A stretch of 35,886 nt of DNA, taken from positions 110,087,246-110,123,131 of the forward strand of contig NC_068985.1 of the NCBI RefSeq assembly GCF_001194135.2, given 5' to 3'. Positions within the stretch are counted from its first letter, which is position 1. The number at the start of each line of letters is the position of its first letter. Positions 16,170 to 33,033 of this stretch are shown here, piece by piece. The position numbers and the translations under genes are program-made. Below the pieces are notes generated by a model, which did no database searches, was not told the DNA's origin, and was given only the letters and a program-made list of their open reading frames with translations. Source of the DNA: Octopus bimaculoides. Its lineage: Eukaryota.

Positions 16170-16242
16170 GGTCGCTGCCGTGAATCGAACTCGGAACCTT
16201 GGGGTTAGTAGCCCGTGCTCTTAACCACTACGCCATATGCCC
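16170..16242 (-). other. tRNA-derived segment with Pol III A and B boxes inside the PLE-like fragment
   Basis: Minus strand GGGCATATGGCGTAGTGGTTAAGAGC...GAGTTCGATTCACGG: A box TGGCGTAGTGG, B box GTTCGATTC. Acceptor stem does not pair, so not a tRNA gene. Confidence 0.7.
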
Positions 16243-16679
16243 GTAGGCAATTATGGGGTGAATTTTAAGGCTTATAAATCTATTATTTTTCTATCCTTCC
16301 TCAATACCGGTTCCCATATGCTATTCATATCTGNNNNNNNNNNATGCCCGTAGGCAATTATGGGGTGAATTTTAAGGCTTATAAATCTATTATTTTTCTA
16401 TCCTTCCTCAATACCGGTTCCCATATGCTATTCATATCTGCACTCGGTCTGCTTAGGAGGTTGTTGTGTCCTAGCATATGTGCTGCTTCAAATGTAAATA
16501 ATGTAAATAATTCCTCATCTCTTAAATATAGAACTGAGTTTTCTTTTTGTTTCATTAATAAATTTGCCAGTTTTCGCATTTCTTTTTATTTCTTCCAAAG
16601 TTACTGGTAGTACACACACAATGTTCCACATCACTTTTTTCGTTTCAGTTCATCGACCTCATTCGATCATTTGACTGCT

Positions 16680-17948
16680 ATTGCATAAAGCGCTTATGAG
16701 TGTATCCCATAAATTAAATTTCTCCATACATTCGGTGCTAAATAAATTCATGGATTTTCTCAACACATAACCATTCACTTTTTTTGGTTTGACCTTTGAA
16801 CACTATGTTACAAACACGTTTGCCCGTAAAATATAATTTTCTTCCTGTAACACCATATGCTATTTTGTTTGAACTACATAATTTTGGTTTACCCACTTGT
16901 TCCCAGGTTTTCTTATTTATGATTGTGATATCACTTCCCATGTCTAATTGCATTCTGATGCTAGTATTTTCAATTTTCACATTCACAAATTTTCTGTTTT
17001 TTGTAGTCACAACTTTTTCAGCTGCCAAACTATTTATTTTTCCTTGTTTGTTCCATTTCCCTATCATTCTAGTTTTGTAGTGCAATTTTATATGTCCTAT
17101 AAACCCACAGTGAAAACACTTTGCTTTTTTATATGGGCAATCTTTTTTCAGGTGCATTCCACCACATGCCATACATGGGTCTACATCCTGATTTTTTTTT
17201 CTGTTTTTTCCTGCAACATTTTATTTGTCTTCCAGCATTTTTGCACTGGTCTTATGTGGAAATACTCTTTCCATTGAATTTCTTCCATGTCATGCCTTAA
17301 TTTTGATATCCTCTCACACTCTTCAGACAGTTTCTGCAATGTCAAATCCTGGTTCATTTCCAGTTTTGATAGAATTTTTGTTCGGATTTCTGCATCACTT
17401 CTATCTGTCAATCCTTGTGCAAAATTCAAACACTTGAAAGAATCTGGAGTAAACACATCTAACCTAAATTTCTTACATTCTTTGTTGACTCTGCCTGTGT
17501 AAGTAGTGAAATCTTCACTCTTTTCTATGTTTAAACATTTCCATCTGATATTAAACAGTGAGCTCTTTTCACTAAACATTTTGCACAAAATGTCAACTGT
17601 GTTGGTGAAATTTATGGTGGACACTTTTTTTGGCAATATGAAGTTACTATACTTCTCATGCTCTACTGTCGCTAGTTTTCTTAACACTAGATAGGTTTTC
17701 ATTTTGTCCGTCCAATCCTGACCTTTTTCAAAAATTTGTTGAAATCTTCGAAAGTATACCTCAAAGATTACTCCTTCTTCGGGGTCATATTTTAATTCGC
17801 TTATGGAATTTGCTACATAGACAGGCGAAACTGTATTCTCTGGTTTGGTTATCAACTTCCGCAGTCCTTGTTGTTCTTCTCATTGTTCCTTGAGTTGTTA
17901 TTGCTGCTGTTTTGGCAACTAAACTATCTTAGCTAACAAGTCTTCCAT
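16680..17948 (-). mobile_element. Ty3/Gypsy LTR retrotransposon relic: gag, CCHC zinc knuckle, aspartic protease (disrupted)
   Basis: ATG at 17948 is in frame with ORF 17181-17855 (YDPEEGVIFEVYFRRFQQIF...) through in-frame stops. Frameshift into ORF 16738-17172 with CFHCGFIGH knuckle and LDMGSDITII (D[T/S]G protease motif altered). Confidence 0.9.
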
Positions 17949-18083
17949 ATTTAATGATTTTCCTAAGTTTGCACAACAAGTTTTTTGTTTCTTTTTGTCG
18001 AAGTATTTAATTTTCCACATGAATTAGTTTAAACTCTCTGTGTGTGAATGTTCTTTTTTACACTCCACGTAAATTTGTTTTTT

Positions 18084-18100
18084 CTCATCGCCACTGTTAC
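18084..18100 (-). promoter_or_regulatory. Primer-binding site and 3' end of the 5' LTR of the Gypsy relic
   Basis: Minus strand GTAACA-G-TGGCGATGAG about 135 nt upstream of the gag ATG, resembling the TGGCGAC/T-type PBS after an LTR ending in CA. LTR extent unresolved (SINE tail at about 18165). Confidence 0.6.
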
Positions 18101-18496
18101 AAGGTAGCCTTTTACCACTGTTGTATCTGTTTTTGATGACAATTATTGCTCTGAGAGATATTGCGACTAAAGGCGGTGCTCCAGCATGGCCGCAGTCAAA
18201 TGACCGAAACAAGTAAAAGAGAGTAAAAGAGAGTATCATAATCGCTTTATATTTTAGCTCTTTAGCATTTGAACCAGCCAAATCAGGTCAAAATATTATC
18301 AATGTTTTATGTCCAAAATGACAAAAAGCATTAAAATGTCTGACATCAAATAAGTCATGTATTGAATCAGTGACACCAAAATAGGTGGCGCTAAAACTTC
18401 TATGCCAAAATGTCTCATACCGCACTTCAATGTTTTTCAATGTCATGTGAACTTGTAACATCTATTTTGTTTTTTTCTTTTTTTGTGTGTTTCTAG

Positions 18497-18641
18497 GTTG
18501 TGATGCTCTCTGCTATCCCACCATTGAAGAAACTTTGCAAAGCTGCCTATCACAGTCTATCACATTCTCGATGAATCCTAATGATTTACTTCGGACAGAG
18601 ATCAATAACCTATCACGTAGTCAGATGAAGGAACTTTGCCA
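18497..18641 (+). CDS. Coding exon A of a multi-exon Cys-rich, probably secreted protein (GCDALCYPTIEETLQSCLSQ...MKELCQ)
   Basis: Pyrimidine tract + TTTCTAG acceptor (AG 18495-18496), donor CA|GTATGT at 18642. Entry phase 1, exit phase 2; CA + A of exon B gives Gln in frame. Confidence 0.88.
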
Positions 18642-18722
18642 GTATGTATCTAATTACTTTGTCTATCTGTCTGTTTGTCTTTCTCTCCAGTTCTCTCGCT
18701 CTCTCTTTCTCTTTGTACATAA

Positions 18723-18753
<31 letters not shown>

Positions 18754-19148
18754 ACATGCACACACACATAGCTACACATATAGATATGCACAGACACACA
18801 CACATACACACATGCTTATACATAAACATACATATGCCATGTAAGCTAACCAATACCTGTGTACATTTTTAAACCAAAATCTATTTTCTCTAGATTTTTC
18901 CTTTCTATATTTACCTCTTTTTCCCTTCCCCTCTTTTCCCGTTTTATACCTATATTCAGCAGATGGACAATGTCCAAAACATCATAATTAACTCTTTCCA
19001 GTTATTAGAGCATCAAACTAATAATTGTGATTGTGAGCCTGTCTCTCTTACTGTTTCTAGGATGAGTTTTTCTCATCATAGATTGACTGCTTTCACTGCT
19101 ACTAAGAAACTCAATCTACCCTTACAAAAATTTATTTAATCAATAGAT

Positions 19149-19320
19149 ATAGGTGCAGGAGTGGCTGTGTGGTAGGTAGCTTGCTTACCAACCACATGGT
19201 TCTGGGTTCAGTCCCACTGCATGGCACCTTGGGCAAGTGTCTTTTACTATAGACTTGGACCAGCCAAAGCCTTGTGAGTGGATTTGGTAGTTGGAAACTG
19301 AAAGAACCCCATCATATATA
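19149..19320 (+). mobile_element. Family B/C SINE 5' half
   Basis: GGTGCAGGAGTGGCTGTGTGG...GGTTCAGTCCC...CACCTTGGGCAAGTGTC; other partial heads at about 9410-9560, 21730-21890 and 28451-28720. Confidence 0.85.
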
Positions 19321-20563
19321 TTTTATTATATGTATTTATTTTCTCCTAGTAATAAATAACTCGGATAAAAATACTATGCGTTTACTCCATTCTTTAAATT
19401 TATATATATAAACAAATAGTAAATGAGTATATGCATATATACGTACAGGTATGTGCATACCGACATCCACCTGTATGTATAGGTGCATATCTGGGTACAG
19501 GACATTGCAAACAAAACAGAGACGAGAAAACACACAAGCCACATAGAGAACATTCTACTTCATCAGCTACCTCCGTTTTAACACCGGCGTTTCGAAGAGC
19601 TATATATATTTATTTGTTCTTTCCCTTATTTCTCACCATTTTGGCAGTTCTACACCATCATATGACAATACTTTGCCATTTTTTTATAAGCACACCACAC
19701 TTATTAATCCCAAATTGTCTCTGCATTCTTTGTTTTAGCTCTTCGAGGACTACATTTAACCCTTTTTTCTTGACCTTATATCTACATTCTAATTTCTGAT
19801 ATTTCTACTTTCTTATTTCTCTTTTTTATTTTTCTTCCAGGATGTTGATGTGCTTTCATATTCTGTTCAGTGATTGCTTTATCCTTCTTTTCTACCAAGG
19901 CTCTTTGACTACATTTCCTCTCTTACAGTTTGTTCAAGACCTATTTTCCTTCCTATATAGATGATGCAAGCTTTAATCAATCTATTTATTCCACCTATTA
20001 TCCATTTTAATTTCTTTCGGTACTTTATTAACCTCCTGAGTCCATCTCTGAGCAAAATTCTGTTTCCTTTTATAAATCCATTTACTTCTATGTCCAAACT
20101 TCTCTCAATGATACCCATAATTTCATTGGTCATTACTGTCTTCATTGCTCAGTCCCTCTACATTCTCAAAACCTAAACCAGCATTATTCTCTGAAACACT
20201 TTCATCCAAAACAACTTGGTCAATATTCTCTGTAGTCACTTCATCTTCACCACTGGGTTTTCAGTCATTCCGCTCTTCTTAATCTCATCAAGCTCTAATG
20301 CTGTTAACCATCTGTTCCTCCTTATTATCTTTACCTGGTCACACAATCTCTGTAATATCCAGATATTGTCTCTCCATTCAGATGTCATGCATTCTCATTC
20401 AATATCTTTTTATGAACTTCCTTTCACCATCAACATGTCTGCTCAGAATATATCGTCCTATGACAGCTATATTCTTCACTTTAGAGCATCTTGTTCTGGC
20501 AGCTGTATGACGGTAACCAGGCCTCTGCTGCTCAACCACAGAACACCTGCCAGGGCAAGAGTC

Positions 20564-21010
20564 CATCATCATCATCATCGTTTAACGTCCGCTTTCCATG
20601 CTAGTATGGGTTGGACGACTTGACTGAGGACTGGTGAAACCGGATGGCAACACCAGGCTCCAATCTAAATTTGGCAGAGTTTCTACAGCTGGATGCCCTT
20701 CCTAATGCCAACTACTCAGAGAGTGTAGTAGGTGCTTTTACGTGTCACCTGCACGAAGGCCAGTCAGGCGATACTGGCAACGGCCACGCTCGAAATGGTG
20801 TCTTTTATGTGCCACCCGCACAAGCCAGTCCAGGGGCACTGGCAACAATCTCACTCGAAAATCCTACGGAGGCCAGTCAGGCGGTACTGGCAACGGCCAC
20901 GCTCAAAATGGTGCATCTTATGTGCCACCTGCACAAGAGCCAGTCCAGGGGCCCTGGCAACGATCTTACTTGGCTTGCCGGGTCTTCTCACGCACAGCAC
21001 ATTTCCATCA
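20564..21010 (-). mobile_element. Family A retroposon, long copy with internal tandem subrepeats
   Basis: Same terminus as 4113; GGCCAGTCAGGCG(A/G)TACTGGCAACGGCCACGCTC repeated at 20759 and 20871. Confidence 0.88.
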
Positions 21011-21135
21011 TCTGAAGATTACAGATCCAAGCCGTCACTGGAACTGTAAAAATTTGTAAAACTTTCCAGAAGCTTATCATTTAAGTATATACGAGCATGT
21101 GTAGTCATACAATTATAAGCATGAGAATACATACA

Positions 21136-21552
21136 CTCTTTTACTGTTTTACTCTTTTACTGTTTTACTCTTTTACTTGCTTCAGTCATTTGACTGCGGC
21201 CATGCTGGAGCACCGCCTTTACTCGAGCAAATCAACCCCAGGACTTATTCTTTTGTAAGCCTAGTATTTATTCTATCGGTCTCTTTTGCCAAACCGCTAG
21301 GTTACAGATCCGTAAACACACCAGCATCGGTTGTCAAGTGATGCTGGGGGGGACAAACACACACAAACATATACACACACATACATATATATACGACAGG
21401 CTTCTTTCAGTTTCCGTCTACCATATCCACTCACAAGGCTTTGGTCGGCCTGAGGCTATAGTAGAAGACACTTGCCCAAGGTGCCACGCAGTGGGAATGA
21501 ACCACCAGGAACCATGTGGTTGGTAAGCAAGCTACTTACCACACAGCCACTC
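21136..21552 (-). mobile_element. Family B/C SINE, near full length
   Basis: Co-linear with 10806-11207. Confidence 0.88.
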
Positions 21553-22242
21553 CTATACAAATCTGCACATGCACTGACTTCAAATACTGCGCATGCACAC
21601 ACATACATGCAAAGATACTCTGTTGATGTTGATGAAATTCCAATAAGGGAACCTTGGATCTAGGTTAGAAACTGGCTCTTTCTCTATTGGCAAGAAATCT
21701 TGAAATAAAACTGAATAAAGACATACGTATATGAATGATGCATATCTTTCAGTTTCTATCAACTAAATCCACTCACAAAGCTTTGGTTGGCCTGGGGCTA
21801 TAATGGAAGAAGCTTGCCCATAGGTGTTTCACTGTGGGACTGCACACTAGATCATATGGGTTAAAAAGTAAATTTCTTACCCACACAGTCTCACAGACAC
21901 ACACTCTTTGGTGTGTTTATGTCCCCCGTAACTTACCAGTTTGGCAAAAGAGACCGATAGAATAAGTACTAGGCTTACAAAGAATAAGTCCTGGGGTCGA
22001 TTTTCTCGACTAAAGGCGGTGCTCCAGCATGGCCGCAGTCAAATGACTGAAACAAGCAAAAGAATCCTGCAATGGTTTGGTCCATATAACTCAGAAAGGA
22101 TTTCATCCTTTTATATTATATTATGTAATTTTCTTTGTACTCAACACATGATCTAGAACAGGTAACCACTTACTTATTTTTTTTTTTTTGCTTGATAAAG
22201 TATTGTAACTATCGTTCTCTGATTTGTGTTCTTCTTCTGCAG

Positions 22243-22370
22243 AATATTCTACAACTTCAAAGATTGTGTGGAAGAAGAGTTGAAACCATGTATGGACAAG
22301 GATGAATTTGAGAAAATTCTGGAAGCATTTGAAGAATCGTTCAACTATATTTGTCATGAAGGGTTTGAGC
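22243..22370 (+). CDS. Coding exon B (IFYNFKDCVEEELKPCMDKDEFEKILEAFEESFNYICHEGFE)
   Basis: Acceptor CTTCTTCTGCAG, donor C|GTATGT at 22371. 128 nt = 1+42x3+1, open and phase-compatible with exons A and C. Not shown in the ORF track. Confidence 0.9.
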
Positions 22371-22404
22371 GTATGTTGAGCATTATTGTTAATGTATGAT
22401 TTAT

Positions 22405-22442
<38 letters not shown>

Positions 22443-23045
22443 TATCATCATCACATTCTTTTTCATTGGTGTCATCGTCATCACCACCACCATCGTCATC
22501 ACCACCACCATCGTCATCACCACCACCATCGTAATCACCACCACCATCGTCATCACCACCACCAAAATCACCACCACATCTGCCACCACCATCACATCAT
22601 CATTGTCATAATAATGTTGATCATTGCAATCACCGCATCACCATCATCATCACCACCATCATCTTCATCATCATCATAGCACCACCACCACCACCACCAC
22701 CACCACCACCACCATCATCATTATCATCATTGCAACCATCACATTATCACCATTCCCATTGTCATAATCATCGTCATCGTCTTCGTCGTCATCATCATCA
22801 TTATCATTACCATCATAATCCTCATTATCGTTCTCTTTGTCATTACTGCATCATCACCATCATCATCATTGCCGCCACCATCATACCATCAACGCAACCC
22901 ACCACCACCGTCACTACCATTATCAGCCTCATAATCCGCTTCATGGCTATCATTTTCACCACCATCCTCTATACCATCATCAGCATCATAATCACCATCA
23001 TCATCACCTATAGCAACAGCAGCAGCAGCAGCGGCAGCAGCACTG
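22405..23045. repeat. Compound (CAT/CAC)n low-complexity tract at the start of intron B-C
   Basis: Seen directly. Similar tracts at 13930-14122, 24820-24912, 25845-25930 and 28000-28085; (TTA/TTG)n at 27035-27103 and 27493-27687. Confidence 0.95.
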
Positions 23046-23329
23046 TCATTGCTCTCATTTTATTGTTCATTTTTCCATGCTATTTACATGAATATTTTAT
23101 TAGTTAATGAGAGAACGACATGCAACAGCCATGACTTTTTACTCAGTCAAACACAATCTCGCACACATAGATGAATGTAAGCCTACACAGAGACACATCT
23201 ATAGTTATACATGTATCTATATATATATATATACATACACATACTAAGATGCAACTTAGTACAATCTTGCCTACAAATATACAATATTGCTGTTAGTATC
23301 CTGTCCAAGATATGAGATATTTCCTCATT

Positions 23330-23507
23330 TGACAACCGATGCTGGTGTGTTTACGTCCCCGTAACTTAGCGGTTCGGCAAAAGAGACTGATAGAATAAGT
23401 ACTAAACTTACAAAGAATAAGTCCTGGGGTCGATTTGCTCGACTAAAGGTGGTGCTCCAGCATGGCCGCAGTCAAATGACTGAAACAAGTAAAAGAGTAA
23501 AAGAGTA
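23330..23507 (+). mobile_element. Family B/C SINE 3' half
   Basis: GACAACCGATGCTGGTG...GACTGAAACAAGTAAAAGAGTAAAAGAGT; other tails at about 4700-4950, 18165-18235, 21905-22062 and 23941-23985. Confidence 0.88.
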
Positions 23508-24800
23508 GGGCAAGCTGGCAGAGTCGTTAGTGAACTGGATAAGATATCATTAAGTATATCTTTCAGCTCATTATATCCTGAGTTCTAATTCCACCAAGGT
23601 CAGCTTTGTATTTCATCCTTTCAGGGTTGATAAAAATAAGTACCAGTCAACCATTATGTTAAGTGTAATCCATTGATCGCTACCCCTTAACCCCTTACCA
23701 GGCAAAGACGAGTTAACTTGTTTTCACCTAATTTGTCTTTTTCAAAAACACAAATTACAGCTCTTTATGTTCTGAGTTCAAATTCTGTTGAAGTCAGCTT
23801 TGCATTTCAAACTTTCAGAGCCAAAACATATAATTCCAAAAACAGCCACAGACGATTTTATATGTCAATTTTCAGCATTTCTTAGATTTTTAAAAAATTT
23901 ATTTATTTATTTATTTATTTATTTATTTTTTTTACAAATTATGGCCCCGCAGTCAAATGACTGAAAGAAGTAAAAAGATAAAAGAGTATGTTTGAGCTCA
24001 GGAAAATGAATATATAAAAAGAAAAGATTTTTGAGAAGACATGCTAAAAAAAGAGTAATATGAATGTGTAATTCCCCTTTACTTTTGATGATAAAGTTGG
24101 AAAGAAAAAGCTATGAATAAAAGAAATATTCAAAAAAGTATAGAAAGACGAGTAATCTCATTTTCGCCGAAAATGGTATCTTCAAAATAAAATTTCAAAT
24201 AAAATACTGGAAATAGATAAAAACAAAAATATTTCCATAATCAGCATTAAAAAATACTATTAAAAAAAAAGCAATAAAAAATTCCGTCTGAAAATGAAAT
24301 GTTTTCTCCAAAAAAAGTAGCCAGGAGGGGGGGAAGTTAAATTGCTGGTCCAGTGCCAGAATGTGAAACTACTATTAAGACAGTAGAATTACAGAATCAT
24401 TAATGCACTGGACGCAACACTTAGTGGTGTTGCTCACAGCTCTTTGTGTTCTGAGTTCAAATTCTGTTGAAGTCAGTTTTGCATTTCAACCTTTCAGAGT
24501 CAATAAAATAAGTATCATTGGAATACTGGGTGCAAGGGATCAATGCAATCAATTAATCTCTTCTTCTCCCTATGACTGCTGGCTTTGAGCGAAAATTCGA
24601 ATAATTTAAAGTAAAGAACTGCTAGAATCATTAACATGTTGGTCAAAATGCTTAGTGACGAATGGTTCCAGCTTCTTACAGTCTGAGTTGAAATTCTGTT
24701 AGACTTTTATTTGTTTCTGGGCTGATAAAATTAAGTACCAGCCAAATACTGAAGTTGATATAATGAACTTATTAACATCCCTGAAATTGCTGGCCTGGTG
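23508..24800 (+). mobile_element. Cluster of decayed family E SINE copies, same orientation
   Basis: TGAGTTCAAATTC-like B boxes at about 23580, 23773, 24453 and 24685, and again at 26001. Confidence 0.7.
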
Positions 24801-24878
24801 CCAAAATATGAAACCGCCACTATCATTGTTATCATTGTCGTCATCGTCATCATCATCATTGTCATCGACATCATCATT

Positions 24879-24912
<34 letters not shown>

Positions 24913-25891
24913 NNNNNNNNNNNNNNNNNNNNNNNNNNNNNNNNNNNNNNNNNNNNNNNNNNNNNNNNNNNNNNNNNNNNNNNNNNNNNNNNNNNNNNNN
25001 NNNNNNNNNNNNNNNNNNNNNNNNNNNNNNNNNNNNNNNNNNNNNNNNNNNNNNNNNNNNNNNNNNNNNNNNNNNNNNNNNNNNNNNNNNNNNNNNNNNN
25101 NNNNNNNNNNNNNNNNNNNNNNNNNNNNNNNNNNNNNNNNNNNNNNNNNNNNNNNNNNNNNNNNNNNNNNNNNNNNNNNNNNNNNNNNNNNNNNNNNNNN
25201 NNNNNNNNNNNNNNNNNNNNNNNNNNNNNNNNNNNNNNNNNNNNNNNNNNNNNNNNNNNNNNNNNNNNNNNNNNNNNNNNNNNNNNNNNNNNNNNNNNNN
25301 NNNNNNNNNNNNNNNNNNNNNNNNNNNNNNNNNNNNNNNNNNNNNNNNNNNNNNNNNNNNNNNNNNNNNNNNNNNNNNNNNNNNNNNNNNNNNNNNNNNN
25401 NNNNNNNNNNNNNNNNNNNNNNNNNNNNNNNNNNNNNNNNNNNNNNNNNNNNNNNNNNNNNNNNNNNNNNNNNNNNNNNNNNNNNNNNNNNNNNNNNNNN
25501 NNNNNNNNNNNNNNNNNNNNNNNNNNNNNNNNNNNNNNNNNNNNNNNNNNNNNNNNNNNNNNNNNNNNNNNNNNNNNNNNNNNNNNNNNNNNNNNNNNNN
25601 NNNNNNNNNNNNNNNNNNNNNNNNNNNNNNNNNNNNNNNNNNNNNNNNNNNNNNNNNNNNNNNNNNNNNNNNNNNNNNNNNNNNNNNNNNNNNNNNNNNN
25701 NNNNNNNNNNNNNNNNNNNNNNNNNNNNNNNNNNNNNNNNNNNNNNNNNNNNNNNNNNNNNNNNNNNNNNNNNNNNNNNNNNNNNNNNNNNNNNNNNNNN
25801 NNNNNNNNNNNNNNNNNNNNNNNNNNNNNNNNNNNNNNNNNNNNGTCGTCGTCGTCGTCGTCGTCACCATCACCATCACCATCACCACCAC

Positions 25892-25930
<39 letters not shown>

Positions 25931-26046
25931 AGCAGCAAGCTGGCAGTATTGTTCGCATGCCAAACAAAATGCTTAGTGACATATCATCCAGCTTTATGTT
26001 CTGAGCACAAATTCCACTGAGGTCAAATTTGCCTTTTATCCTTTCT

Positions 26047-26210
26047 GCATGACACAGAGTGTGACAAGGCTGACCCTTTGAATTACAGGCACAACAGAAA
26101 CAAGAAGTAAGAGTGAGAGAGAGTTGTGGTGAAAGAGTACAACAGGGTTCGCCACCCCCCCCCCTGCCTCGTGGAGCTTTAGGTGTTTTTGCTCAATAAA
26201 CACTCACAAC
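26047..26210 (-). mobile_element. Internal fragment of family D SINE, interrupting a family E SINE
   Basis: Reverse complement of about 27180-27345; family E sequence stops at 26045 and resumes at 26211. Confidence 0.8.
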
Positions 26211-27104
26211 ACTGGGGTCAGTATAATTGACTAACCCCACCACCACCACCACCACCACCACCAAAAATTTCAGGCCTTGTGCTAATAATATGATAAAAGG
26301 ACAATGGATTAAGATCCTTCCTGAGTCTGGGTTATCCAATTCAGGATAAACTTTACATGCATGGACGTACCATCAACCAGGCCTGCCCAAGTGGTACACA
26401 GAGCAGTGAAACTCTTCTGCACACACCCAGTGTCCATCCATTGCTGACTTGTGGAGTTATGTTATATCACTAGCTGATATATGTAGGATGGATCCAGCTA
26501 ATAGCTGAATCCATTGTGAAGTCGATCCACTGCTTTGCTTTGGCCAGCAAGGGCCAGCAGTGTTTATCTGTCTGGTGGGCTTAGTGAAAGAGTTTGTGTG
26601 GTAGGCCTGATTGAAAGGTCTGAAAACAGACGCCTTCAACTTCATACAAGTTCTCATCAACTTCTCAAGTTTCACTTAAAAAGGAAAGTGAAAGTGAAGA
26701 GAGATGTGCTGTCTCCCAGCATACTTGCTGGCAGGTGAAAGTGAGTGGTGAGTTTGGTCCAAATGAAGGGGTATGCTCTAGCCACATGCCTGTAGATTGG
26801 AGGATAACGGAGAAGGTATTTTCCTTAGTAGTCATGGTAACCATGGTTTTGAGGGGTTTTCCATAATAGCCCTTGAAGCTCTCATCCTTTGAGGAACTTG
26901 TCATTGTTTGGAATTCATTGTTTCTTTGCTACTGTTGTTCTCTCTCTTACATTTCTTTCATGCAATCCCACATTGCATCATCCTGTAACATCCCCAATAT
27001 TTTTGTGAGCCCTTAGTGGTTAAGAAGGAAGACATTATTATTATTATTATTATTATTATTATCATTATTAATATTATTATTATTATTGTTGTTGTTGTTG
27101 TTGT

Positions 27105-27492
27105 GGAGGCGCAATGGCCCAGTGGTTAGGGCAGCGGACTCGCGGTCATAGGATCGCAGTTTCGATTCCCAGACCAGGCGTTGTGAGTGTTTATTGAGCG
27201 AAAACACCTAAAAGCTCCATGAGGCTCTGGCAGAGGGGTAGTGGCGAACCCTGCTGTACTCTTTCACCACAACTTTCTCTCACTCTCACTTCCTGTTTCT
27301 GTTGTGCCTGTATTTCAAAGGGCCAGCCTTGTCACACTGTGTCACGCTGAATATCCCCGAGAACTACGTTAAGGGTACACGTGTCTGTGGAGTGCTCAGC
27401 CACTTGCATGTTAATTTCACGAGCAGGCTGTTCTGTTGATCGGATCAACTGAAACCCTTGTCGTTGTAAACAACGGAGTGCCAACAACAACA
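27105..27492 (+). mobile_element. Full-length tRNA-derived SINE (family D) with (CAA)n tail
   Basis: GGAGGCGCAATGGCCCAGTGGTTAGGG head, B box GTTTCGATTCC; highly similar to 32254-32633; inserted in a TTA/TTG microsatellite. Confidence 0.9.
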
Positions 27493-27536
<44 letters not shown>

Positions 27537-27553
27537 TGTTGTTGTTGTTACTA

Positions 27554-27591
<38 letters not shown>

Positions 27592-27647
27592 GTTGTTATT
27601 ATTACTATTGTTGTTGTTGTTATTGTTGTTACTATTATTATTATTAC

Positions 27648-27687
<40 letters not shown>

Positions 27688-28252
27688 GGGGGTGCATGGT
27701 CTCATGGATAAGGTGTTGCACTCACGATCGCCAGACCCATGGTTTCAATTCCTAGACCAGGCGGTGCGTTGCTTTCTTGAGCAAAAACACTTCATATCAC
27801 ATTTCTCTGCAACCACTTCGACACCTGACATGTGGCACACCGTGCCCCTGTTCAAGCAATGTTGATTTGACGGAGGGAGGGAGTGACTTGATGTATAGCG
27901 CACATACATTTGATCACTATAAAATAAATCATGCAGATTATTTGGCAAAAGCTGAATACCCATATGCCATCTTTGCTGGGAGAGTCCATTATCAGCATTA
28001 TTATTATTGTCATTATCATCACTGTCATCGTTGTCATCGTTATCGTTATTGTCATCACTATTATCACCATCATCCATTTTATTATCATATGATATTGTGA
28101 AGTCCATGGTCTTATATTGTTTGATTCTTTCGTCCTTCCTTTATTATCGAAGTAGTAATGATGGTGTCATAAACAATTTCATCTATTTAACTACAGCTGT
28201 TCCACACGTCCAAGACCAAGCTGAAATACAGTTGTGTCTGTTTCCATTTCAG

Positions 28253-28394
28253 TTCTCATGAAGATCAAACCATGTACATCATCAGCAAACTTCAAGGACC
28301 ACATGAGCCAATGCTCTTACGATGCACAGTACAAAGTCAACCGACACAATGTCAGATTGATGAATGATTACATGATGAAAATGAAAGTTTGCAG
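28253..28394 (+). CDS. Coding exon C (LMKIKPCTSSANFKDHMSQCSYDAQYKVNRHNVRLMNDYMMKMKVC)
   Basis: Acceptor TTTCCATTTCAG, donor AG|GTAAGT at 28395. 142 nt = 2+46x3+2; C+TT gives Leu at the B/C junction. Confidence 0.9.
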
Positions 28395-28724
28395 GTAAGT
28401 TTGCACAATGTTATAGAACACTGCTGCTTTTATAGGGCTCTTATTCATAATAGGTGCAGGCATGGCTGTGTGGTAAGAAGTTTTCTTACTAACCATATGG
28501 TTCCAGGTTCAGTCCCACTCTGTGATACCTTGGGCAAGTGTCTTCTGTTATAAACTCAGGCCAACCAAAAACTTTGTGGAATTTGGTAGACAGAATCTGT
28601 AAGAAACCCATTGTAAACATGGCTGTGTGGTTCTGGACTCAGTCCCACTGCATGGCACCTTGGGCTGACCAAAGCCTTGTGAGTGAATTTGGTAGACTGA
28701 AACTGAAAGAAGCTCATCATATAT

Positions 28725-28755
<31 letters not shown>

Positions 28756-29087
28756 ACCACTCTCTGAGTGGTTGGCTTTAGGAAGGGCATCCAGCTGTAG
28801 AAACACTGCCAAATCAGATTGGAGCCTGGTGTAGCCATCTGGTTTCACCAGTCCTCAGTCAAATCGTCCAACCCATGCTAGCATGGAAAGCGGACGTTAA
28901 ACGACGACGACAATACGTACAGACATATATATATNNNNNNNNNNNNNNNNNNNNNNNNNNNNNNNNNNNNNNNNNNNNNNNNNNNNNNNNNNNNNNNNNN
29001 NNNNNNNNNNNNNNNNNNNNNNNNNNNNNNNNNNNNNNNNNNNNNNNNNNNNNNNNNNNNNNNNNNNNNNNNNNNNNNNNNNNNNNN

Positions 29088-29252
29088 CCACTCTCTGAGT
29101 GGTTGGCTTTAGGAAGGGCATCCAGCTGTAGAAACACTGCCAAATCAGATTGGAGCCTGGTGTAGCCATCTGGTTTCACCAGTCCTCAGTCAAATCGTCC
29201 AACCCATGCTAGCATGGAAAGCGGACGTTAAACGATGATGATGATGATGATG
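29088..29252 (+). mobile_element. Family A 3' end (near-identical block also at 28756-28910)
   Basis: CCACTCTCTGAGTGGTTGG...GGACGTTAAACGATGATG. Confidence 0.9.
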
Positions 29253-29459
29253 ATAATAAAGGTTATGAAGGGTATTGGAGTCAACCAAACCCTAAAGATA
29301 CAGGTAATACCGAGTAAGTGCTGTATACCGACTAGTTATGCCCCTGTCGTTGTATCAACATGAGTGGGGAATATAACATAGGTCGTGTATTAGCATGTGT
29401 AATAGTAGATGTTGTAATCCTTTCTTATAGATGTTATAATCCTTTCTTCTACTATTACC

Positions 29460-29508
29460 GTCTCCGATGAAGGGATACATTGGATTTTCCCTGAAACAGC
29501 TGTAAGAC
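29460..29508 (+). ncRNA. Minimal type I hammerhead ribozyme motif (U4C core variant), intronic, sense to host gene
   Basis: GTCT-CCGATGA-AGGGA...TCCCT-GAAA-CAGCTG-TA-AGAC: helix I GTCT/AGAC, helix II AGGGA/TCCCT, palindromic helix III ACAGCTGT, GUA cleavage triplet at 29502-29504. Confidence 0.7.
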
Positions 29509-29620
29509 TTTATGCATAAAATATAATTCTAATTTTGCCATTGGTCTCTTTATTCTTTTCTTTCTTTATACATAAATATATATATATATATATATATATA
29601 AAAGTATATATTTATAGAAA

Positions 29621-29807
29621 TATAATTATAATTAAGGGCACTGGAATGGCAATGCCTATACACTAGAAGTAGATGTCAGATGTCTACAAGCGACTCTAGA
29701 ACCCTTCGGTTGTAAATAGAGAACATATTTACAGTGGCTTGTAGATATTTAACATCTACTTCTGATGTATAGGCACTGGCACTCCAGCACCCTTAATTAT
29801 AGTTATA
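29621..29807. mobile_element. Fold-back MITE-like element with about 70-bp arms
   Basis: 29621-29691 matches the reverse complement of 29737-29807 with scattered mismatches; TTAA-GGG...CCC-TTAA internal ends; inner hairpin TGTAAATA/TATTTACA. Confidence 0.8.
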
Positions 29808-29922
29808 TTTTTATAATTATATACTTAAATATTAATTTTACTGATATGGTGGTGTTTTTCTATGCTAGCCACTGATATGATCATTTTAATCATTATATCC
29901 TCAATTTATGAATATGTGTATC

Positions 29923-30100
29923 ATCATCATCATCATCATCATCGTTTAACATCCGCCTTCCATGCTAGCATGGGTTGGACGATTTGACTGAGGACTGGTG
30001 AAACCAGATGGCTACACCAGGCTCCAATCTGATTTGGCAGAGTTTCTACAGTTGGATGCCCTTCCTAACGCCAACCACTCAGAGAGTGTAGTGGGTGCTT
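29923..30100 (-). mobile_element. Family A 3' end, inverted relative to 29088-29252
   Basis: CATCATCGTTTAAC...GAGAGTGTAGTGGGTGCTT; other copies at 188-288, 2770-3040, 12440-12690, 15088-15270 and 34586-34822. Confidence 0.9.
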
Positions 30101-30130
30101 ATATACCATTCTCATTTTTTTTCCCTATTT

Positions 30131-30186
30131 GTCTCTGATGATGGAATATCCCATACCCAGAGATTTCCCAGAAACAGCTGTAAGAT
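30131..30186 (+). ncRNA. Minimal type I hammerhead ribozyme motif (canonical CUGAUGA/GAAA core), intronic, sense to host gene
   Basis: GTCT-CTGATGA-TGGAA...TTCCCA-GAAA-CAGCTG-TA-AGAT: helix I GTCT/AGAT, bulged helix II, palindromic helix III ACAGCTGT, GUA triplet at 30180-30182. Confidence 0.75.
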
Positions 30187-30266
30187 TTTGAATTCTTCCT
30201 ATAATAATATTGTATACGACTTGAGGTGTTTGCCTTGCTTTAATGTTTGTTGTCCTGTTTAACAAT

Positions 30267-30297
<31 letters not shown>

Positions 30298-30417
30298 CTA
30301 TATAAATATATTTATGTATATAACAACAAGGATGACTTTGTGTCTGTGTTTATCCCCCAACCACTACTTGATAACCAGAGTTGGTTATGATGATGATAAT
30401 GATTTCACACAGCTTCA

Positions 30418-30700
30418 CTAATGTTCAATACATGCACCATCTGTTACACGACACACATCAAGTCGGTACTCCAGCTCCTGCCAAACATGCTGTAGTATGT
30501 CTTGCGCATAACATTCTCCACCACCTCTGTGAGTCTCTGTTTGAGTTCCTCTAGGTTTGTAAGAAGAGTGGGGGTATAGACCAATTCTTTCACTTAGTCC
30601 CATAGAAAAAAATCACAAGGTGTCAAGTCAGGTGAGCGTGGTAGCCATTCCAACAGCGCATTGTCATTAACAGTGACATACCTGATCCAAACTTAGTTTT
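30418..30700 (-). mobile_element. Tc1/mariner-superfamily transposase C-terminal fragment
   Basis: Minus strand EWLPRSPDLTPCDFF, then frameshifted LQHVWQELEYRLDVCRVTDGACIEH. Confidence 0.85.
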
Positions 30701-30821
30701 GACTCATTTTATTTTTACACATCTTACACATTTAGTTTTTATTCATTTTGAGATCATTCGAGTGAGAATTGGCTATGTTATTAGACACCAAAATGATGTC
30801 AATTTTTGGTGGTGTGTCTGT

Positions 30822-30862
<41 letters not shown>

Positions 30863-31438
30863 NNNNNNNNNNNNNNNNNNNNNNNNNNNNNNNNNNNNNN
30901 NNNNNNNNNNNNNNNNNNNNNNNNNNNNNNNNNNNNNNNNNNNNNNNNNNNNNNNNNNNNNNNNNNNNNNNNNNNNNNNNNNNNNNNNNNNNNNNNNNNN
31001 NNNNNNNNNNNNNNNNNNNNNNNNNNNNNNNNNNNNNNNNNNNNNNNNNNNNNNNNNNNNNNNNNNNNNNNNNNNNNNNNNNNNNNNNNNNNNNNNNNNN
31101 NNNNNNNNNNNNNNNNNNNNNNNNNNNNNNNNNNNNNNNNNNNNNNNNNNNNNNNNNNNNNNNNNNNNNNNNNNNNNNNNNNNNNNNNNNNNNNNNNNNN
31201 NNNNNNNNNNNNNNNNNNNNNNNNNNNNNNNNNNNNNNNNNNNNNNNNNNNNNNNNNNNNNNNNNNNNNNNNNNNNNNNNNNNNNNNNNNNNNNNNNNNN
31301 NNNNNNNNNNNNNNNNNNNNNNNNNNNNNNNNNNNNNNNNNNNNNNNNNNNNNNNNNNNNNNNNNNNNNNNNNNNNNNNNNNNNNNNNNNNNNNNNNNNN
31401 NNNNNNNNNNNTATGTATATTTGTAAAAATGAATAGAA

Positions 31439-31520
31439 ATGGCTTTTCTCATAATTTTTTCACATGTTTAAGCTAATAAACATCTAATTATTAATGTGGA
31501 AAAATTACCAGAAAAGCCAT
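31439..31520. repeat. 27-bp inverted repeat (hairpin) about 360 nt upstream of exon D
   Basis: ATGGCTTTTCTCATAATTTTTTCACAT vs ATGTGGAAAAATTACCAGAAAAGCCAT, 3 mismatches. Confidence 0.8.
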
Positions 31521-31575
31521 CTCTCTTCATTTTTTCAAATACACAATACTGTACTAATGACTTTCAATTTCTTAT

Positions 31576-31614
<39 letters not shown>

Positions 31615-31882
31615 CCATATATATTATGCCACGGTCAACTTTGCCTTTCATGCTTTCAGGGTCAATAAAATACGGACCAGTTGAACACTGGGGTCGATGT
31701 AATCGACTCATCCCTTCTCCCCAAACACATGAATTTATAGGTATATTTGCATAACTTTACAGTATACACACACACAGTTTCATTCACACAACCAAATAAG
31801 TAGTGAAAGAGACACAGAAGGAGTGTGGAAATGCATCACATTGTTCTGTTACAAAAACCACTAATTTTTGTGAATATTTCAG

Positions 31883-32025
31883 ATACCTCGAAGAATCACT
31901 AGAATGCGCAGAGACAGTTGCACAGAAACTATGTGGAAATGATGCTCAAAAATATTATCATGAACTCAACGTCAGGACAATGGGACCAGCCAAGAGATTT
32001 CTACGCTGTCACCAGGCCAGAAACA
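31883..32025 (+). CDS. Coding exon D (YLEESLECAETVAQKLCGNDAQKYYHELNVRTMGPAKRFLRCHQARN)
   Basis: Acceptor ATATTTCAG, donor A|GTAAGT at 32026. 143 nt = 1+47x3+1; AG+A gives Arg at the C/D junction. No stop codon, so at least one more exon follows. Confidence 0.9.
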
Positions 32026-32253
32026 GTAAGTTTAATGTTAAAAATACATAAGCTTCTACATGACTAGTAGAAACAGCAGTCAAATCCTCCTTAAGCCAAA
32101 ACTCCCCTGGCAGTTTAAAAATAAAGAAGACTTATTAAATAATGTAGTCCTACATACACTGTGACTGGAAAAAGACAAAGACAGGATGGCCATGGTTGTT
32201 GGAACATCTTTGATCACAGATCTTTTAGATCAGGCTTGAATTAAGGCAAAACA

Positions 32254-32633
32254 GGAGGTGCAATGGCCCAGTGGTTAGGGCAGCGGACTCGCGGTCATAG
32301 GATCGCAGTTTCGATTCCCAGACCGGGCATTGTGAGTGTTTATTGAGTGAAAACACCTAAAGTTCCACAAGGCTCCGGCAGGGGATGGTGGCGAACCCTG
32401 CTGTACTCTTTCACCACAACTTTCTCTCACTCTTACTTCCTGTTTCCGTTGTGCCTGTAATTCAAAGGGTCAGCCTTGTCACACTGTATCACGCTGAATA
32501 TCCCCGAGAACTACGTTAAGGGTACACGTGTCTGTGGAGTGCTCAACCACTTGCACGTTAATTTCACGAGCAGGCTGTTCCGTTGATCGGATCAACTGGA
32601 ACCCTCGATGTCATAAGCGACGGAGTGCCAACC
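32254..32633 (+). mobile_element. Full-length family D SINE with 12-bp target-site duplication
   Basis: TAAGGCAAAACA at 32242-32253 and 32634-32645. Confidence 0.92.
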
Positions 32634-32776
32634 TAAGGCAAAACAACAACAACTGTCAGTTGTTTTTGCTGATATTGTCCTCTCAACCCCTGTCAGCCTG
32701 GATCAAGCAGGCTTTTGATTAAAGATGTTCCTGTTATGAGAACCCCATCTTTTATCTAAATGCAGTGTATCGAAAA

Positions 32777-33033
32777 CAGTGGTTCTCAAACCTTTTTTAC
32801 CTATAGACCTCTTTGATTCCTATGTTCCTTGGATAGACCCTCATATCCATTCAGTGCTTGAAAAAGCCTATAAAATTTTCATAATTAAATATTTACTAGG
32901 AATTGCATTAAAAAAATTGTTAAAATATTATGTGTGATTTTAGAAGTATAAGCAATTTATTGTACATAACTTTTAACAACAAAATCCTGTAAGGAGCCCT
33001 AAGGGTCAGGTGGACCCTAGTTGAGAACCATTG
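32777..33033. mobile_element. hAT (Charlie-like) MITE
   Basis: TIRs CAGTGGTTCTCAA / TTGAGAACCATTG (12/13); flanks ATCGAAAA / ATCTAGAA resemble a decayed 8-bp NTCTAGAN target duplication. Confidence 0.8.

What the first reader, a model, noticed from the sequence alone, without database searches (positions are those of the whole stretch)
18497..32025. Hidden four-exon gene encoding a tandem duplication of a 6-Cys helical module
Seen: four exons join into one uninterrupted 186-codon frame with phases 1-2-1-2-1. Cys spacing is C-x10-C-x30-C-x8-C-x7-C-x20-C in exons A+B and C-x12-C-x25-C-x8-C-x8-C-x24-C in exons C+D. The phase-2 intron falls just after the third Cys in both modules, so each module is a symmetric phase 1-1 two-exon cassette. 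GCDA-LC resembles a signal peptidase site and there is one N-L-S sequon. Inference: a secreted or GPI-anchored disulfide-bonded all-alpha protein made by exon-cassette duplication; resemblance to DUF19/T20D4.11-like or CPG4-like invertebrate domains is from memory only. I recognise no named gene.
Basis: partly seen in the sequence, partly recalled or inferred. Interest (0 to 1): 0.72.

Follow-up and report, generated by a model that had tools for sequence, protein, structure and literature searches.

The report
Annotated octopus membrane-protein gene, exons 2–5
The four exons are real and encode the whole outer part of an already catalogued but unstudied Octopus bimaculoides cell-surface protein (LOC106871567), so this is a correct reading of an ordinary gene, not a hidden new one.

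Summary
Four + strand exons (18497-18641, 22243-22370, 28253-28394, 31883-32025) have AG/GT borders and phases 1-2-1-2-1, and join into 558 nt with the stated Cys spacings.

The three N gaps lie deep in introns. Gap-free O. sinensis and O. vulgaris loci and a cuttlefish-like transcript are collinear across every junction, so no exon is hidden.

The gene is not hidden. It is RefSeq LOC106871567 (XP_014773559.1), which UniProt calls a 'Chondroitin proteoglycan 4 domain-containing protein'.

The window lacks two parts of the gene:
- Exon 1 (signal peptide) lies about 70 kb upstream of exon A in O. sinensis.
- The last exon lies about 1.5 kb past the window end and carries a transmembrane helix and a 140-aa tail with PPxY motifs.

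So this is a type I membrane protein, not a secreted or GPI-anchored one.

The two 6-Cys halves together form one ancient 12-Cys all-helical domain (AF2 pLDDT 89.7). It is a weak, sub-threshold relative of Pfam DUF19, CPG4 and DUF1397. The halves look like an old internal duplication. An annelid homologue has the same exon phases and intron positions. Function is untested.

The parts
1..18496 (+). 3' part of intron 1 of the gene. Exon 1 (start codon and signal peptide) is not in the window.
   Evidence: The window is collinear with O. sinensis L002 from about 49.9 kb to 91.8 kb, whereas O. sinensis exon 1 is at L002 10001-10058. Neither tblastn nor blastn with O. sinensis exon 1 finds it in the window.
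18497..18641 (+). Exon A (gene exon 2), 145 nt. It enters in phase 1 and leaves in phase 2. It encodes the end of the signal peptide (G-C-D-A) and Cys 1-3 of the N-half. It contains the RefSeq model's internal start ATG at 18571-18573 and the N-L-S sequon at 18607-18615.
   Evidence: It is 137/145 nt identical to O. sinensis with the same splice sites. The decapod protein hits it at E 1.7e-9.
18642..22242 (+). Intron 2, phase 2. It splits the codon directly after the third Cys of the N-half.
   Evidence: The annelid Capitella has an intron at the same position and phase.
22243..22370 (+). Exon B (gene exon 3), 128 nt. It encodes Cys 4-6 of the N-half and the conserved Y-I-C-H-E-G motif.
   Evidence: It is 123/128 nt identical to O. 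sinensis. The decapod hit is E 3.9e-13.
22371..28252 (+). Intron 3, phase 1, the boundary between the two halves. It contains the assembly gap 24913-25844, an (ATC)n array at 22405-22869 and an (ATT)n array at 27493-27687.
   Evidence: The orthologous O. sinensis intron is gap-free. The B/C junction sequence HEGF[ED]LLMKIKPC is contiguous in the decapod transcript.
28253..28394 (+). Exon C (gene exon 4), 142 nt. It encodes Cys 1-3 of the C-half.
   Evidence: It is 136/142 nt identical to O. sinensis. The decapod hit is E 1.5e-12. The equivalent Capitella exon is also 142 nt.
28395..31882 (+). Intron 4, phase 2. It splits the codon directly after the third Cys of the C-half. It contains the gaps 28935-29087 and 30863-31411.
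   Evidence: The O. sinensis counterpart is only 805 bp (L002 88905-89709) and gap-free. The C/D junction is contiguous in the decapod transcript.
31883..32025 (+). Exon D (gene exon 5), 143 nt. It encodes Cys 4-6 of the C-half and the conserved C-G-x-D-A motif, and leaves in phase 1.
   Evidence: It is 138/143 nt identical to O. sinensis. The decapod hit is E 2.3e-8 and the Capitella hit is E 1.4e-4.
32026..35886 (+). 5' part of the last intron. The final exon (transmembrane helix, PPxY tail and stop) lies outside the window. It begins near L001 28865 (where the tblastn match starts) and ends at 29344, which is roughly window-equivalent 37435-37914, beyond a 1066-N gap.
   Evidence: tblastn of P0003 on L001, with offset window = L001 + 8570.

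Best explanation
Shown:
- The four exons are exons 2-5 of a six-exon Octopus bimaculoides gene, RefSeq LOC106871567, on chromosome CM046605.1.
- Together they encode the complete extracellular domain of a single-pass type I membrane protein.
- That domain is one compact all-helical unit of about 180 aa held by 12 conserved cysteines.
- The unit is built from two related 6-Cys halves, each encoded by a two-exon cassette of phases 1-2-1.
- This arrangement is older than the mollusc-annelid split.
- Exon 1 (the signal peptide MDNLRFMFLFSVGLLPFWG in O. sinensis) lies far upstream of the window. Exon 6 (transmembrane helix plus a tail of about 140 aa carrying PPQY and a conserved C-terminal PPPSYEQVMAE) lies just downstream of it.

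Inferred:
- The signal peptide is cut near GCDA|LC. That removes the odd 13th Cys and leaves 12 Cys for six disulfides.
- The rigid helical ectodomain acts as a binding or co-receptor surface at the cell membrane.
- The cytoplasmic PPxY motifs recruit WW-domain proteins, most plausibly Nedd4-family ubiquitin ligases. That would couple the protein, and whatever it binds, to ubiquitin-dependent endocytosis and sorting.

Gene identity and architecture are near certain. I rate the binding and PPxY mechanism at about 0.35-0.4.
For: Identity:
- The spliced peptide is 100% identical to XP_014773559.1 over the part that model covers.
- The window is 100% identical to GCA_001194135.2 CM046605.1.

Full architecture:
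- The O. sinensis/vulgaris orthologue P0003 (355 aa) and the decapod transcripts P0004 and P0005 show signal peptide, domain, TM helix and tail.
- The decapod form occurs on at least 136 transcript contigs.

Selection:
- 534 of 558 exon nt are identical to O. sinensis with no indels and with the splice sites kept. Flanking intron sequence is 62-95% identical with indels.
- Codon differences are 8 synonymous and 12 non-synonymous.

Domain unit:
- 42 library proteins match at E <= 1e-3. Two of them (P0022, P0029) match only through short repeats and are probably spurious. Nearly all the others match across both halves.
- All 12 Cys and the YLCxEG and CGxEA motifs are conserved.

Fold: AF2 gives pLDDT 89.7 and pTM 0.83, all helices.

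Internal duplication:
- HHalign of the N-half against the C-half scores 26.7, against 8.9 +/- 1.7 (maximum 17.1) for 60 column shuffles.
- Both phase-2 introns follow the aligned third Cys.

Age: Capitella teleta ELU08433.1 has phases 1-2-1-2-1, domain exons of 163, 122, 142 and 137 nt, and a last exon holding the TM helix and PPxY tail.

PPxY: 9 of 18 relatives with a TM helix and tail carry PPxY in the tail. That PPxY is a class I WW-domain ligand is established knowledge, not tested here.
Against: - No O. bimaculoides RNA was available, so the junctions rest on orthologues and a decapod transcript.
- Exon 1 was not seen in O. bimaculoides. It is outside the window and outside the 10-kb flank I could fetch.
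- No ligand, expression pattern or phenotype is known for any family member.
- Nine of the 18 relatives with a TM helix and tail lack PPxY, and other relatives look GPI-anchored or secreted. The tail mechanism is therefore not a property of the domain family as a whole.
- Disulfide pairing could not be checked, because model coordinates are not exposed.
- Signal-peptide cleavage was not predicted with a dedicated tool.
Confidence: 0.85

Rival explanations
1. An unannotated four-exon gene for a secreted or GPI-anchored protein, made by a recent tandem duplication of a two-exon 6-Cys cassette.
For: Some distant relatives do end in a short hydrophobic, GPI-like C-terminus, or have none (10 and 13 of 41). 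The halves are related and share intron position and phase.
Against: The gene is annotated. The same transcript continues into a TM helix and a long conserved tail in octopus, cuttlefish-like species and annelid. Both halves are present together in all distant relatives, and the annelid gene shares the exon structure, so the duplication is ancient.
Confidence: 0.05
2. The gene is a decaying or non-functional copy in O. bimaculoides. The RefSeq model lacks a signal peptide because exon 1 has been lost.
For: Exon 1 is not found in the window or in L001. The RefSeq model starts at an internal Met.
Against: By synteny the window starts about 40 kb downstream of where exon 1 lies in O. sinensis, so its absence from the window is expected. 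All four exons are intact, with no indels and conserved splice sites, and all 12 Cys are kept. The last exon is also intact.
Confidence: 0.04
3. It is a chondroitin proteoglycan core protein like C. elegans CPG-4, as the UniProt name suggests.
For: The best Pfam lead is CPG4 (PF15481) at E 3.3e-5, and the UniRef name says the same.
Against: The score of 24.8 bits is below the curated 32.7. CPG-4's glycosaminoglycan sites lie in its C-terminal half, outside the Cys-rich domain (PMC2063922). The octopus ectodomain has no Ser-Gly dipeptide at all (direct reading of the peptide).
Confidence: 0.04
4. Each half is a neuritin-like or RGM-N-terminal-like module. The protein would then be a membrane co-receptor for a secreted growth factor (BMP-like), as RGMs are.
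For: With the family profile and with the C-half profile, the only consistent PDB hits are RGM N-terminal domains (RGMB, RGMA, RGMC), with five Cys aligned, at E 0.07-0.9. At E <= 0.001, 5 of 42 relatives give weak Pfam hits to NRN1 and 3 of 42 to RGM_N, and a few more match RGM_N at E <= 0.01.
Against: No hit is significant. Foldseek with the whole-domain model and with the C-half model does not retrieve RGM (best E 1.8 and 2.5). The octopus protein itself gives no NRN1 or RGM_N hit. It has no vWD/GDPH part and no GPI anchor.
Confidence: 0.12
5. The four segments are chance open frames with chance AG/GT borders.
For: None beyond the AT-rich, repeat-rich context.
Against: There are protein matches to all four segments, in order, from a decapod transcript (E 2e-8 to 4e-13). 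Exon borders are identical in two other octopus genomes. Intron positions are the same in an annelid.
Confidence: 0.01

Closest known systems
RefSeq XP_014773559.1 / LOC106871567 (O. bimaculoides), with its orthologue XP_029637059.1 / LOC115212335 (O. sinensis) and CAI9723138.1 (O. vulgaris)
   Same: It is the same gene. Identity is 100% over the part the O. bimaculoides model covers, and 94% to the O. sinensis protein over the four exons.
   Different: The O. bimaculoides model starts at Met 18571 inside exon A. It therefore lacks exon 1 and the first 24 complete codons of exon A (25 counting the split first codon), including two conserved Cys.
Pfam DUF19 (PF01579, nematode T20D4.11-like secreted proteins)
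   Same: The 157-position model spans the whole two-half domain in relatives (P0036: model positions 1-156, 31.0 bits against a cut-off of 23.2). Both are Cys-rich extracellular domains; the octopus one is predicted all-helical.
   Different: The octopus protein itself scores only 11-15.5 bits. It carries a TM helix and a PPxY tail. As far as I know, DUF19 proteins are mostly small secreted nematode proteins.
Pfam CPG4 (PF15481, Cys-rich domain of C. elegans chondroitin proteoglycan 4)
   Same: It is the best single Pfam lead. It matches residues 16-112 at E 3.3e-5, and 19 of 42 relatives also match.
   Different: The score is below the curated cut-off (24.8 against 32.7 bits). The model straddles the two halves instead of matching one. 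There are no Ser-Gly glycosaminoglycan sites.
Pfam DUF1397 (PF07165, an arthropod family; reported in centipede venom and the mosquito peritrophic matrix)
   Same: The N-half matches model positions 131-201 at 23.0 bits. The relative P0028 passes the cut-off at 34.8 bits.
   Different: The octopus score is below the cut-off of 25.7. Those proteins are soluble, whereas this one is membrane-anchored.
RGM N-terminal domain (PF06535; PDB 4uhz, 4uhy, 4bq6) and neuritin (PF15056)
   Same: These are short helical modules with Cys spacing similar to one half. They are the only PDB family hit by the family profiles.
   Different: E-values of 0.07-0.9 are not significant, and Foldseek gives no support. 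The RGM vWD part and the GPI anchor are absent.
PPxY-bearing single-pass membrane proteins that recruit Nedd4-family ligases (for example Commissureless; the multi-pass Ndfip1/2 use the same motif). This comparison is from my own knowledge.
   Same: A short membrane protein with cytoplasmic PPxY motifs. The C-terminal PPPSY is conserved from octopus to cuttlefish, and PPxY recurs in annelid and other relatives.
   Different: There is no sequence relationship, the ectodomain is unrelated, and WW binding is untested.

Membership tests
LOC106871567 orthologue group (cephalopod gene) | Identical or near-identical protein at the same chromosomal locus, with the same exon borders | tested here: met
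   Identity to XP_014773559.1 is 100%. The window is 100% identical to CM046605.1. Exon borders are identical in O. sinensis and the loci are collinear.
Pfam CPG4 (PF15481) | HMM score at or above the curated cut-off (32.7 bits) | tested here: not met
   Scores are 24.8 bits for the spliced peptide, 20.9 for P0001, 20.3 for P0003 and 25.1 for P0002.
Pfam CPG4 (PF15481) | Chondroitin attachment (Ser-Gly) sites, as in CPG-4 | tested here: not met
   The 185-aa ectodomain has no Ser-Gly dipeptide (peptide). CPG-4's sites lie in its C-terminal half (PMC2063922).
Pfam DUF19 (PF01579) | HMM score at or above the curated cut-off (23.2 bits) | tested here: not met
   Scores are 15.5 bits for the C-half and 11.2 for P0001. 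The link is transitive only: relatives found with the octopus profile pass (P0036 at 31.0 bits, P0025 at 23.3).
Pfam DUF1397 (PF07165) | HMM score at or above the curated cut-off (25.7 bits) | tested here: not met
   Scores are 22.7-23.0 bits. The relative P0028 passes at 34.8 bits.
DUF19/CPG4/DUF1397-like superfamily (12-Cys helical ectodomain) | Conserved 12-Cys pattern over about 170 aa, shared with proteins that pass those Pfam models | tested here: met
   42 proteins match at E <= 1e-3, two of them probably spurious repeat matches; nearly all the rest match across both halves. All 12 Cys are invariant or nearly so in alignments A4 and A5. Pfam hits among the members: CPG4 19, DUF1397 9, DUF19 7.
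DUF19/CPG4/DUF1397-like superfamily (12-Cys helical ectodomain) | All-alpha fold | tested here: met
   AF2 gives pLDDT 89.7 and pTM 0.83 with helices only. The C-half alone gives pLDDT 91.0. This is a prediction, not an experiment.
DUF19/CPG4/DUF1397-like superfamily (12-Cys helical ectodomain) | Six intradomain disulfides | not testable with these tools
   Model coordinates are not exposed. Disulfide mapping by mass spectrometry is needed.
Neuritin family (PF15056) | HMM match and a GPI-anchored single 6-Cys module | tested here: not met
   The octopus protein gives no NRN1 hit at E <= 10. Five of 42 relatives give weak hits. This protein has two modules plus a TM helix and tail.
RGM family (PF06535 RGM_N plus the vWD/GDPH part) | Significant sequence or structural match to RGM_N, and presence of the RGM C-terminal part | tested here: not met
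   HMM against PDB gives E 0.07-0.9. Foldseek does not retrieve RGM. The 319-355 aa proteins have no RGM C-terminal region.
Type I membrane protein | N-terminal signal peptide, one TM helix after the ectodomain, and a cytoplasmic tail | tested here: met
   A hydrophobic N-terminus is present in P0003, P0004 and P0005. One hydrophobic 19-mer follows the domain, then a tail of 114-142 aa. This is a hydropathy scan only; no dedicated predictor was run. Exon 1 was not seen in O. bimaculoides itself.
WW-domain ligands (PPxY class) | PPxY motif in a cytoplasmic segment, conserved among orthologues | tested here: met
   The octopus tail carries PPQY and PPSY, and PPPSYEQVMAE is conserved in decapods. 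PPxY occurs in 9 of 18 relatives with a TM helix and tail. Actual WW binding was not tested.

The most novel reading that the evidence does not exclude
The gene would represent an unstudied family of type I surface receptors. The family is at least as old as the mollusc-annelid ancestor. In it, a 12-Cys helical ectodomain, made by an ancient duplication of a neuritin/RGM-N-like 6-Cys module and with no similar solved structure found by Foldseek, is wired to PPxY motifs. That would make it a ligand-binding co-receptor whose surface level is set by Nedd4-type ubiquitin ligases. It would also tie DUF19, CPG4 and DUF1397 to the vertebrate neuritin and RGM modules as one superfamily.
Probability: 0.25. 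Interest if true: 0.5.

Novelty: already known. Interest (0 to 1): 0.25.

Why it matters
As a gene discovery it matters little, because the locus is already in RefSeq and UniProt.

Three small things are worth keeping:
1. The O. bimaculoides model is 5'-truncated. It begins at an internal Met and lacks the signal peptide and two structural cysteines.
2. The symmetric two-exon cassettes, with phase-2 introns right after the third Cys of each half, are conserved between octopus and an annelid. This is a clean textbook case of an ancient internal domain duplication recorded in intron positions.
3. The domain belongs to a widespread invertebrate superfamily (DUF19/CPG4/DUF1397) for which I found no solved structure and no functional study. 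This branch adds a membrane anchor and PPxY motifs, which gives an experimental handle on what the domain does.

Tried and rejected
- More modules in the window: tblastn with each half found only the four exons.
- Exon 1 in the window: tblastn and blastn with O. sinensis exon 1 found nothing. Synteny shows it should lie about 30-45 kb before the window start.
- The last exon in the window: absent. It lies in L001 beyond a 1066-N gap.
- PDB by sequence: nothing significant. The top hit with the four-cephalopod profile was RNA polymerase III RPC2 at E 0.15, a chance match that probably explains the spurious name 'RPC2' on the Sepia pharaonis model.
- Foldseek against PDB: the whole domain and the C-half both returned only generic helical bundles, at E >= 1.8.
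- A second word-indexed homologue search, with the 43-sequence profile, added no new named relatives.
- The Solemya velum locus was too long to fetch.
- Literature searches for the gene identifiers, DUF19, DUF1397, PF15481 and 'CPG4 domain-containing' returned only omics lists and no functional study.
- Rfam and tRNA scans of the window found nothing.
The O. sinensis ectodomain (94% identical) was folded instead.

Full report
**1. What the window is**

The window is 35,886 bases, 38% G+C, with ten N runs. It is 100% identical, block by block between the gaps, to Octopus bimaculoides chromosome CM046605.1 of assembly GCA_001194135.2. The offset is window x = L001 x + 8570.

**2. Check of the observation**

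Reading the DNA and splicing it confirms every number in the finding.
- Exon A is 18497-18641 (145 nt).
- Exon B is 22243-22370 (128 nt).
- Exon C is 28253-28394 (142 nt).
- Exon D is 31883-32025 (143 nt).

All four have polypyrimidine-AG acceptors and GTATGT or GTAAGT donors. The phases are 1-2-1-2-1. The sum is 558 nt with no stop codon.

The Cys spacings are exactly as stated. There is also a thirteenth Cys at the very start (G-C-D-A-L-C). Both phase-2 introns split the codon immediately after the third Cys of their half. The single N-L-S sequon is at 18607-18615.

**3. The gaps**

The three gaps inside the finding are 24913-25844, 28935-29087 and 30863-31411. All lie in introns 3 and 4, at least 472 nt from any exon edge. 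The reading frame therefore does not depend on their estimated lengths.

Could a gap hide an exon? Three lines of evidence say no.
- The orthologous loci of O. sinensis (L002) and O. vulgaris (L003) have no Ns and carry the same four exons consecutively, with the same splice sites. Intron 4 is only 805 bp in O. sinensis.
- A 1222-nt contig assembled from sequencing run SRR7548197 holds an uninterrupted 334-codon frame (L004, P0004). The protein is at least 90% identical to Sepia pharaonis. It aligns across all junctions without inserted residues.
- A near-identical decapod protein occurs on at least 136 short contigs.

No hidden exon is needed or likely.

**4. It is a real gene, and an annotated one**

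The spliced peptide is 100% identical to XP_014773559.1, 'uncharacterized protein LOC106871567'. UniRef calls it 'Chondroitin proteoglycan 4 domain-containing protein', A0A0L8HCJ5.

That 319-aa model begins at an internal Met (MNPND, 18571). It omits the first 24 complete codons of exon A, which hold two conserved Cys, and it omits any signal peptide.

The O. sinensis/vulgaris orthologue is XP_029637059.1 / CAI9723138.1 (355 aa, P0003). It starts MDNLRFMFLFSVGLLPFWG-GCDAFCYS. Its exon 1 lies 70 kb upstream of exon A.

The window is collinear with O. sinensis from about 49.9 kb to 91.8 kb of L002. The O. bimaculoides exon 1 is therefore expected some 30-45 kb before the window start. Searches for it in the window are negative.

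The last exon encodes TTLIGLGISIALVLAIVVLVIG, then RCLRRHQ, then a tail that ends PPPSYEQVMAEMRNRSEEQ. Its match begins near L001 28865 and it ends at 29344. That is about 1.5 kb past the window end, beyond a 1066-N gap.

So the window holds exons 2-5 of six, which is exactly the extracellular domain.

**5. Conservation**

Against O. sinensis the four exons are 534/558 identical with no indels. The 150-nt flanks are 62-95% identical with indels. Twenty codons differ, 8 synonymous and 12 non-synonymous. Given roughly three non-synonymous sites per synonymous site, that indicates moderate purifying selection.

The decapod protein is about 50% identical and finds all four exons in the window, in order, at E 2e-8 to 4e-13.

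**6. The domain and its family**

Pfam gives only sub-threshold leads for the octopus protein:
- CPG4: 24.8 bits against a cut-off of 32.7.
- DUF1397: 22.7-23.0 bits against 25.7.
- DUF19: 11-15.5 bits against 23.2.

A profile of the four cephalopod ectodomains was searched against 1.84 billion representative proteins. It found 42 proteins at E <= 1e-3. Two of them (P0022, P0029) match only through short repeats and are probably spurious. Nearly all the others match across both halves.

The conserved unit is therefore a domain of about 170-185 aa with 12 conserved Cys and the motifs Y-[LI]-C-x-E-G and C-G-x-[ED]-A.

Named members come from the annelid Capitella teleta (ELU08433.1) and the bivalve Solemya velum. 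Most others are unnamed transcript assemblies.

Several relatives pass Pfam cut-offs:
- P0036: DUF19 at 31.0 bits, over model positions 1-156.
- P0025: DUF19 at 23.3 bits.
- P0028: DUF1397 at 34.8 bits.

Nineteen of the 42 give weak CPG4 hits. At E <= 0.001, 5 give weak neuritin (NRN1) hits and 3 give weak RGM_N hits.

The octopus protein thus joins the DUF19/CPG4/DUF1397 group transitively, as a divergent branch. It fails each family's own threshold.

**7. Structure**

AlphaFold2 was run on the O. sinensis ectodomain (94% identical to the window's) with the 43-sequence alignment. It gives pLDDT 89.7 and pTM 0.83, with only helices. The C-half alone gives pLDDT 91.0.

Foldseek against the PDB finds nothing better than E 1.8 for the whole domain and 2.5 for the C-half. 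The hits are generic helical bundles with low TM-scores (at most 0.29 for the whole domain, at most about 0.5 over short stretches for the C-half).

HMM searches of PDB sequences return only RGM N-terminal domains as consistent hits. Five Cys align, but E is 0.07-0.9. This is a lead, not a result.

**8. Internal duplication**

Single-sequence BLAST of the two halves shows nothing. Profile-profile comparison of the N-half against the C-half of the family alignment gives a local score of 26.7 (E 2.8e-5, probability 74%) with the Cys in register. Sixty column shuffles give 8.9 +/- 1.7, with a maximum of 17.1.

The aligned third Cys of each half is followed, in the very next codon, by a phase-2 intron.

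The Capitella homologue has the same plan:
- Six exons with phases 1-2-1-2-1.
- Domain exons of 163, 122, 142 and 137 nt, against 145, 128, 142 and 143 in octopus.
- The same two phase-2 positions.
- A last exon holding the TM helix and a PPxY tail.

The event predates the mollusc-annelid split and is not a cephalopod novelty.

**9. Topology and likely mechanism**

Aligning octopus FWGGCDA|FC with decapod VVGVQG|TCE places the probable signal-peptide cut after GCDA. It would remove the odd Cys and leave 12. This is an inference; no predictor was run.

A hydropathy scan finds one TM segment after the domain and a tail of 114-142 aa in all cephalopod proteins. The octopus tail carries PPQY and PPSY. 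The C-terminal PPPSYEQVMAE is conserved in decapods.

Among the relatives, 18 have a TM helix plus tail (9 of them with PPxY), 10 end in a GPI-like hydrophobic stretch, and 13 have neither.

From established knowledge, PPxY is the ligand of class I WW domains, as in Nedd4-family ligases and YAP. My best mechanistic guess is a surface binding or co-receptor protein whose trafficking, or whose partner's trafficking, is controlled through WW-domain ubiquitin ligases. Nothing about ligand, tissue or phenotype is known; the literature searches were empty.

The 'proteoglycan' label does not fit. CPG-4's glycosaminoglycan sites lie outside the Cys-rich domain (PMC2063922), and the octopus ectodomain has no Ser-Gly.

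**10. Verdict**

It is partly wrong: the gene is neither hidden nor unnamed, it has six exons rather than four, it is membrane-spanning rather than secreted or GPI-anchored, and the duplication is ancient.

The useful residue is an annotation fix and a tidy example of a duplication recorded in intron phases. The domain superfamily itself has no known function and no solved structure that I could find. Interest is low to moderate.

Noticed in passing
window 15209-17855, minus strand: Remnants of an LTR retrotransposon sit inside intron 1. A gag-like ORF (17181-17855) matches DUF7083 at E 5.7e-15. An ORF with a CCHC-like knuckle (16738-17172) gives weak aspartyl-protease hits. An integrase core fragment (15209-15607) matches rve at 34.9 bits. 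The insertion is shared with O. sinensis at about 90% identity (L002 74929-77168), so it predates the split of the two species.
   Followed up: partly
window 18571-18573 (RefSeq start codon) compared with 18497: The RefSeq model XP_014773559.1 starts at an internal Met. It lacks exon 1 and the first 24 complete codons of exon A (two conserved Cys). It should be extended as in O. sinensis XP_029637059.1.
   Followed up: yes
P0002 (Sepia/Acanthosepion pharaonis CAE1292744.1, 'RPC2'): The cuttlefish genome model is truncated and misnamed. Its N-terminus MFNLFFFSLQ looks like a translated polypyrimidine tract plus CAG acceptor. Its C-terminal ...ACR-stop is what reading through an AG|gtaa donor would give, which is how the octopus exon C donor reads. 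Neither point was checked on the Sepia DNA. The name probably comes from a chance similarity to RNA polymerase III RPC2 (PDB search E 0.15). Transcript contigs give the full 334-335 aa protein.
   Followed up: partly
window 22405-22869 and 27493-27687: Long trinucleotide arrays, (ATC)n of about 154 copies starting 35 nt after the exon B donor and (ATT)n of 65 copies, lie in intron 3. They create long poly-His, poly-Asp, poly-Asn or poly-Tyr pseudo-ORFs on both strands that are not coding.
   Followed up: partly
window about 4097-4326, 15087-15283, 20564-20746, 28757-28904, 29088-29258, 29912-30103, 34572-34765; also 10805-11207, 21152-21549, 23329-23507: Two dispersed repeat families, of about 190 bp and about 400 bp and 88-97% identical between copies, recur on both strands. 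Several copies abut assembly gaps, as do the (TA/TG)-rich microsatellites. The gaps therefore look repeat-caused. No tRNA or Rfam match was found.
   Followed up: partly
window 28395-31882 compared with L002 88905-89709: Intron 4 is about 3.5 kb in O. bimaculoides (with two gaps) but only 805 bp in O. sinensis. The extra DNA is mostly repeat copies.
   Followed up: partly
L001 31098-39344, minus strand (outside the window, downstream): The next called gene encodes a protein of 711 or more residues with VIT and VWA domains, like an inter-alpha-trypsin-inhibitor heavy chain. It converges on the 3' end of LOC106871567.
   Followed up: no
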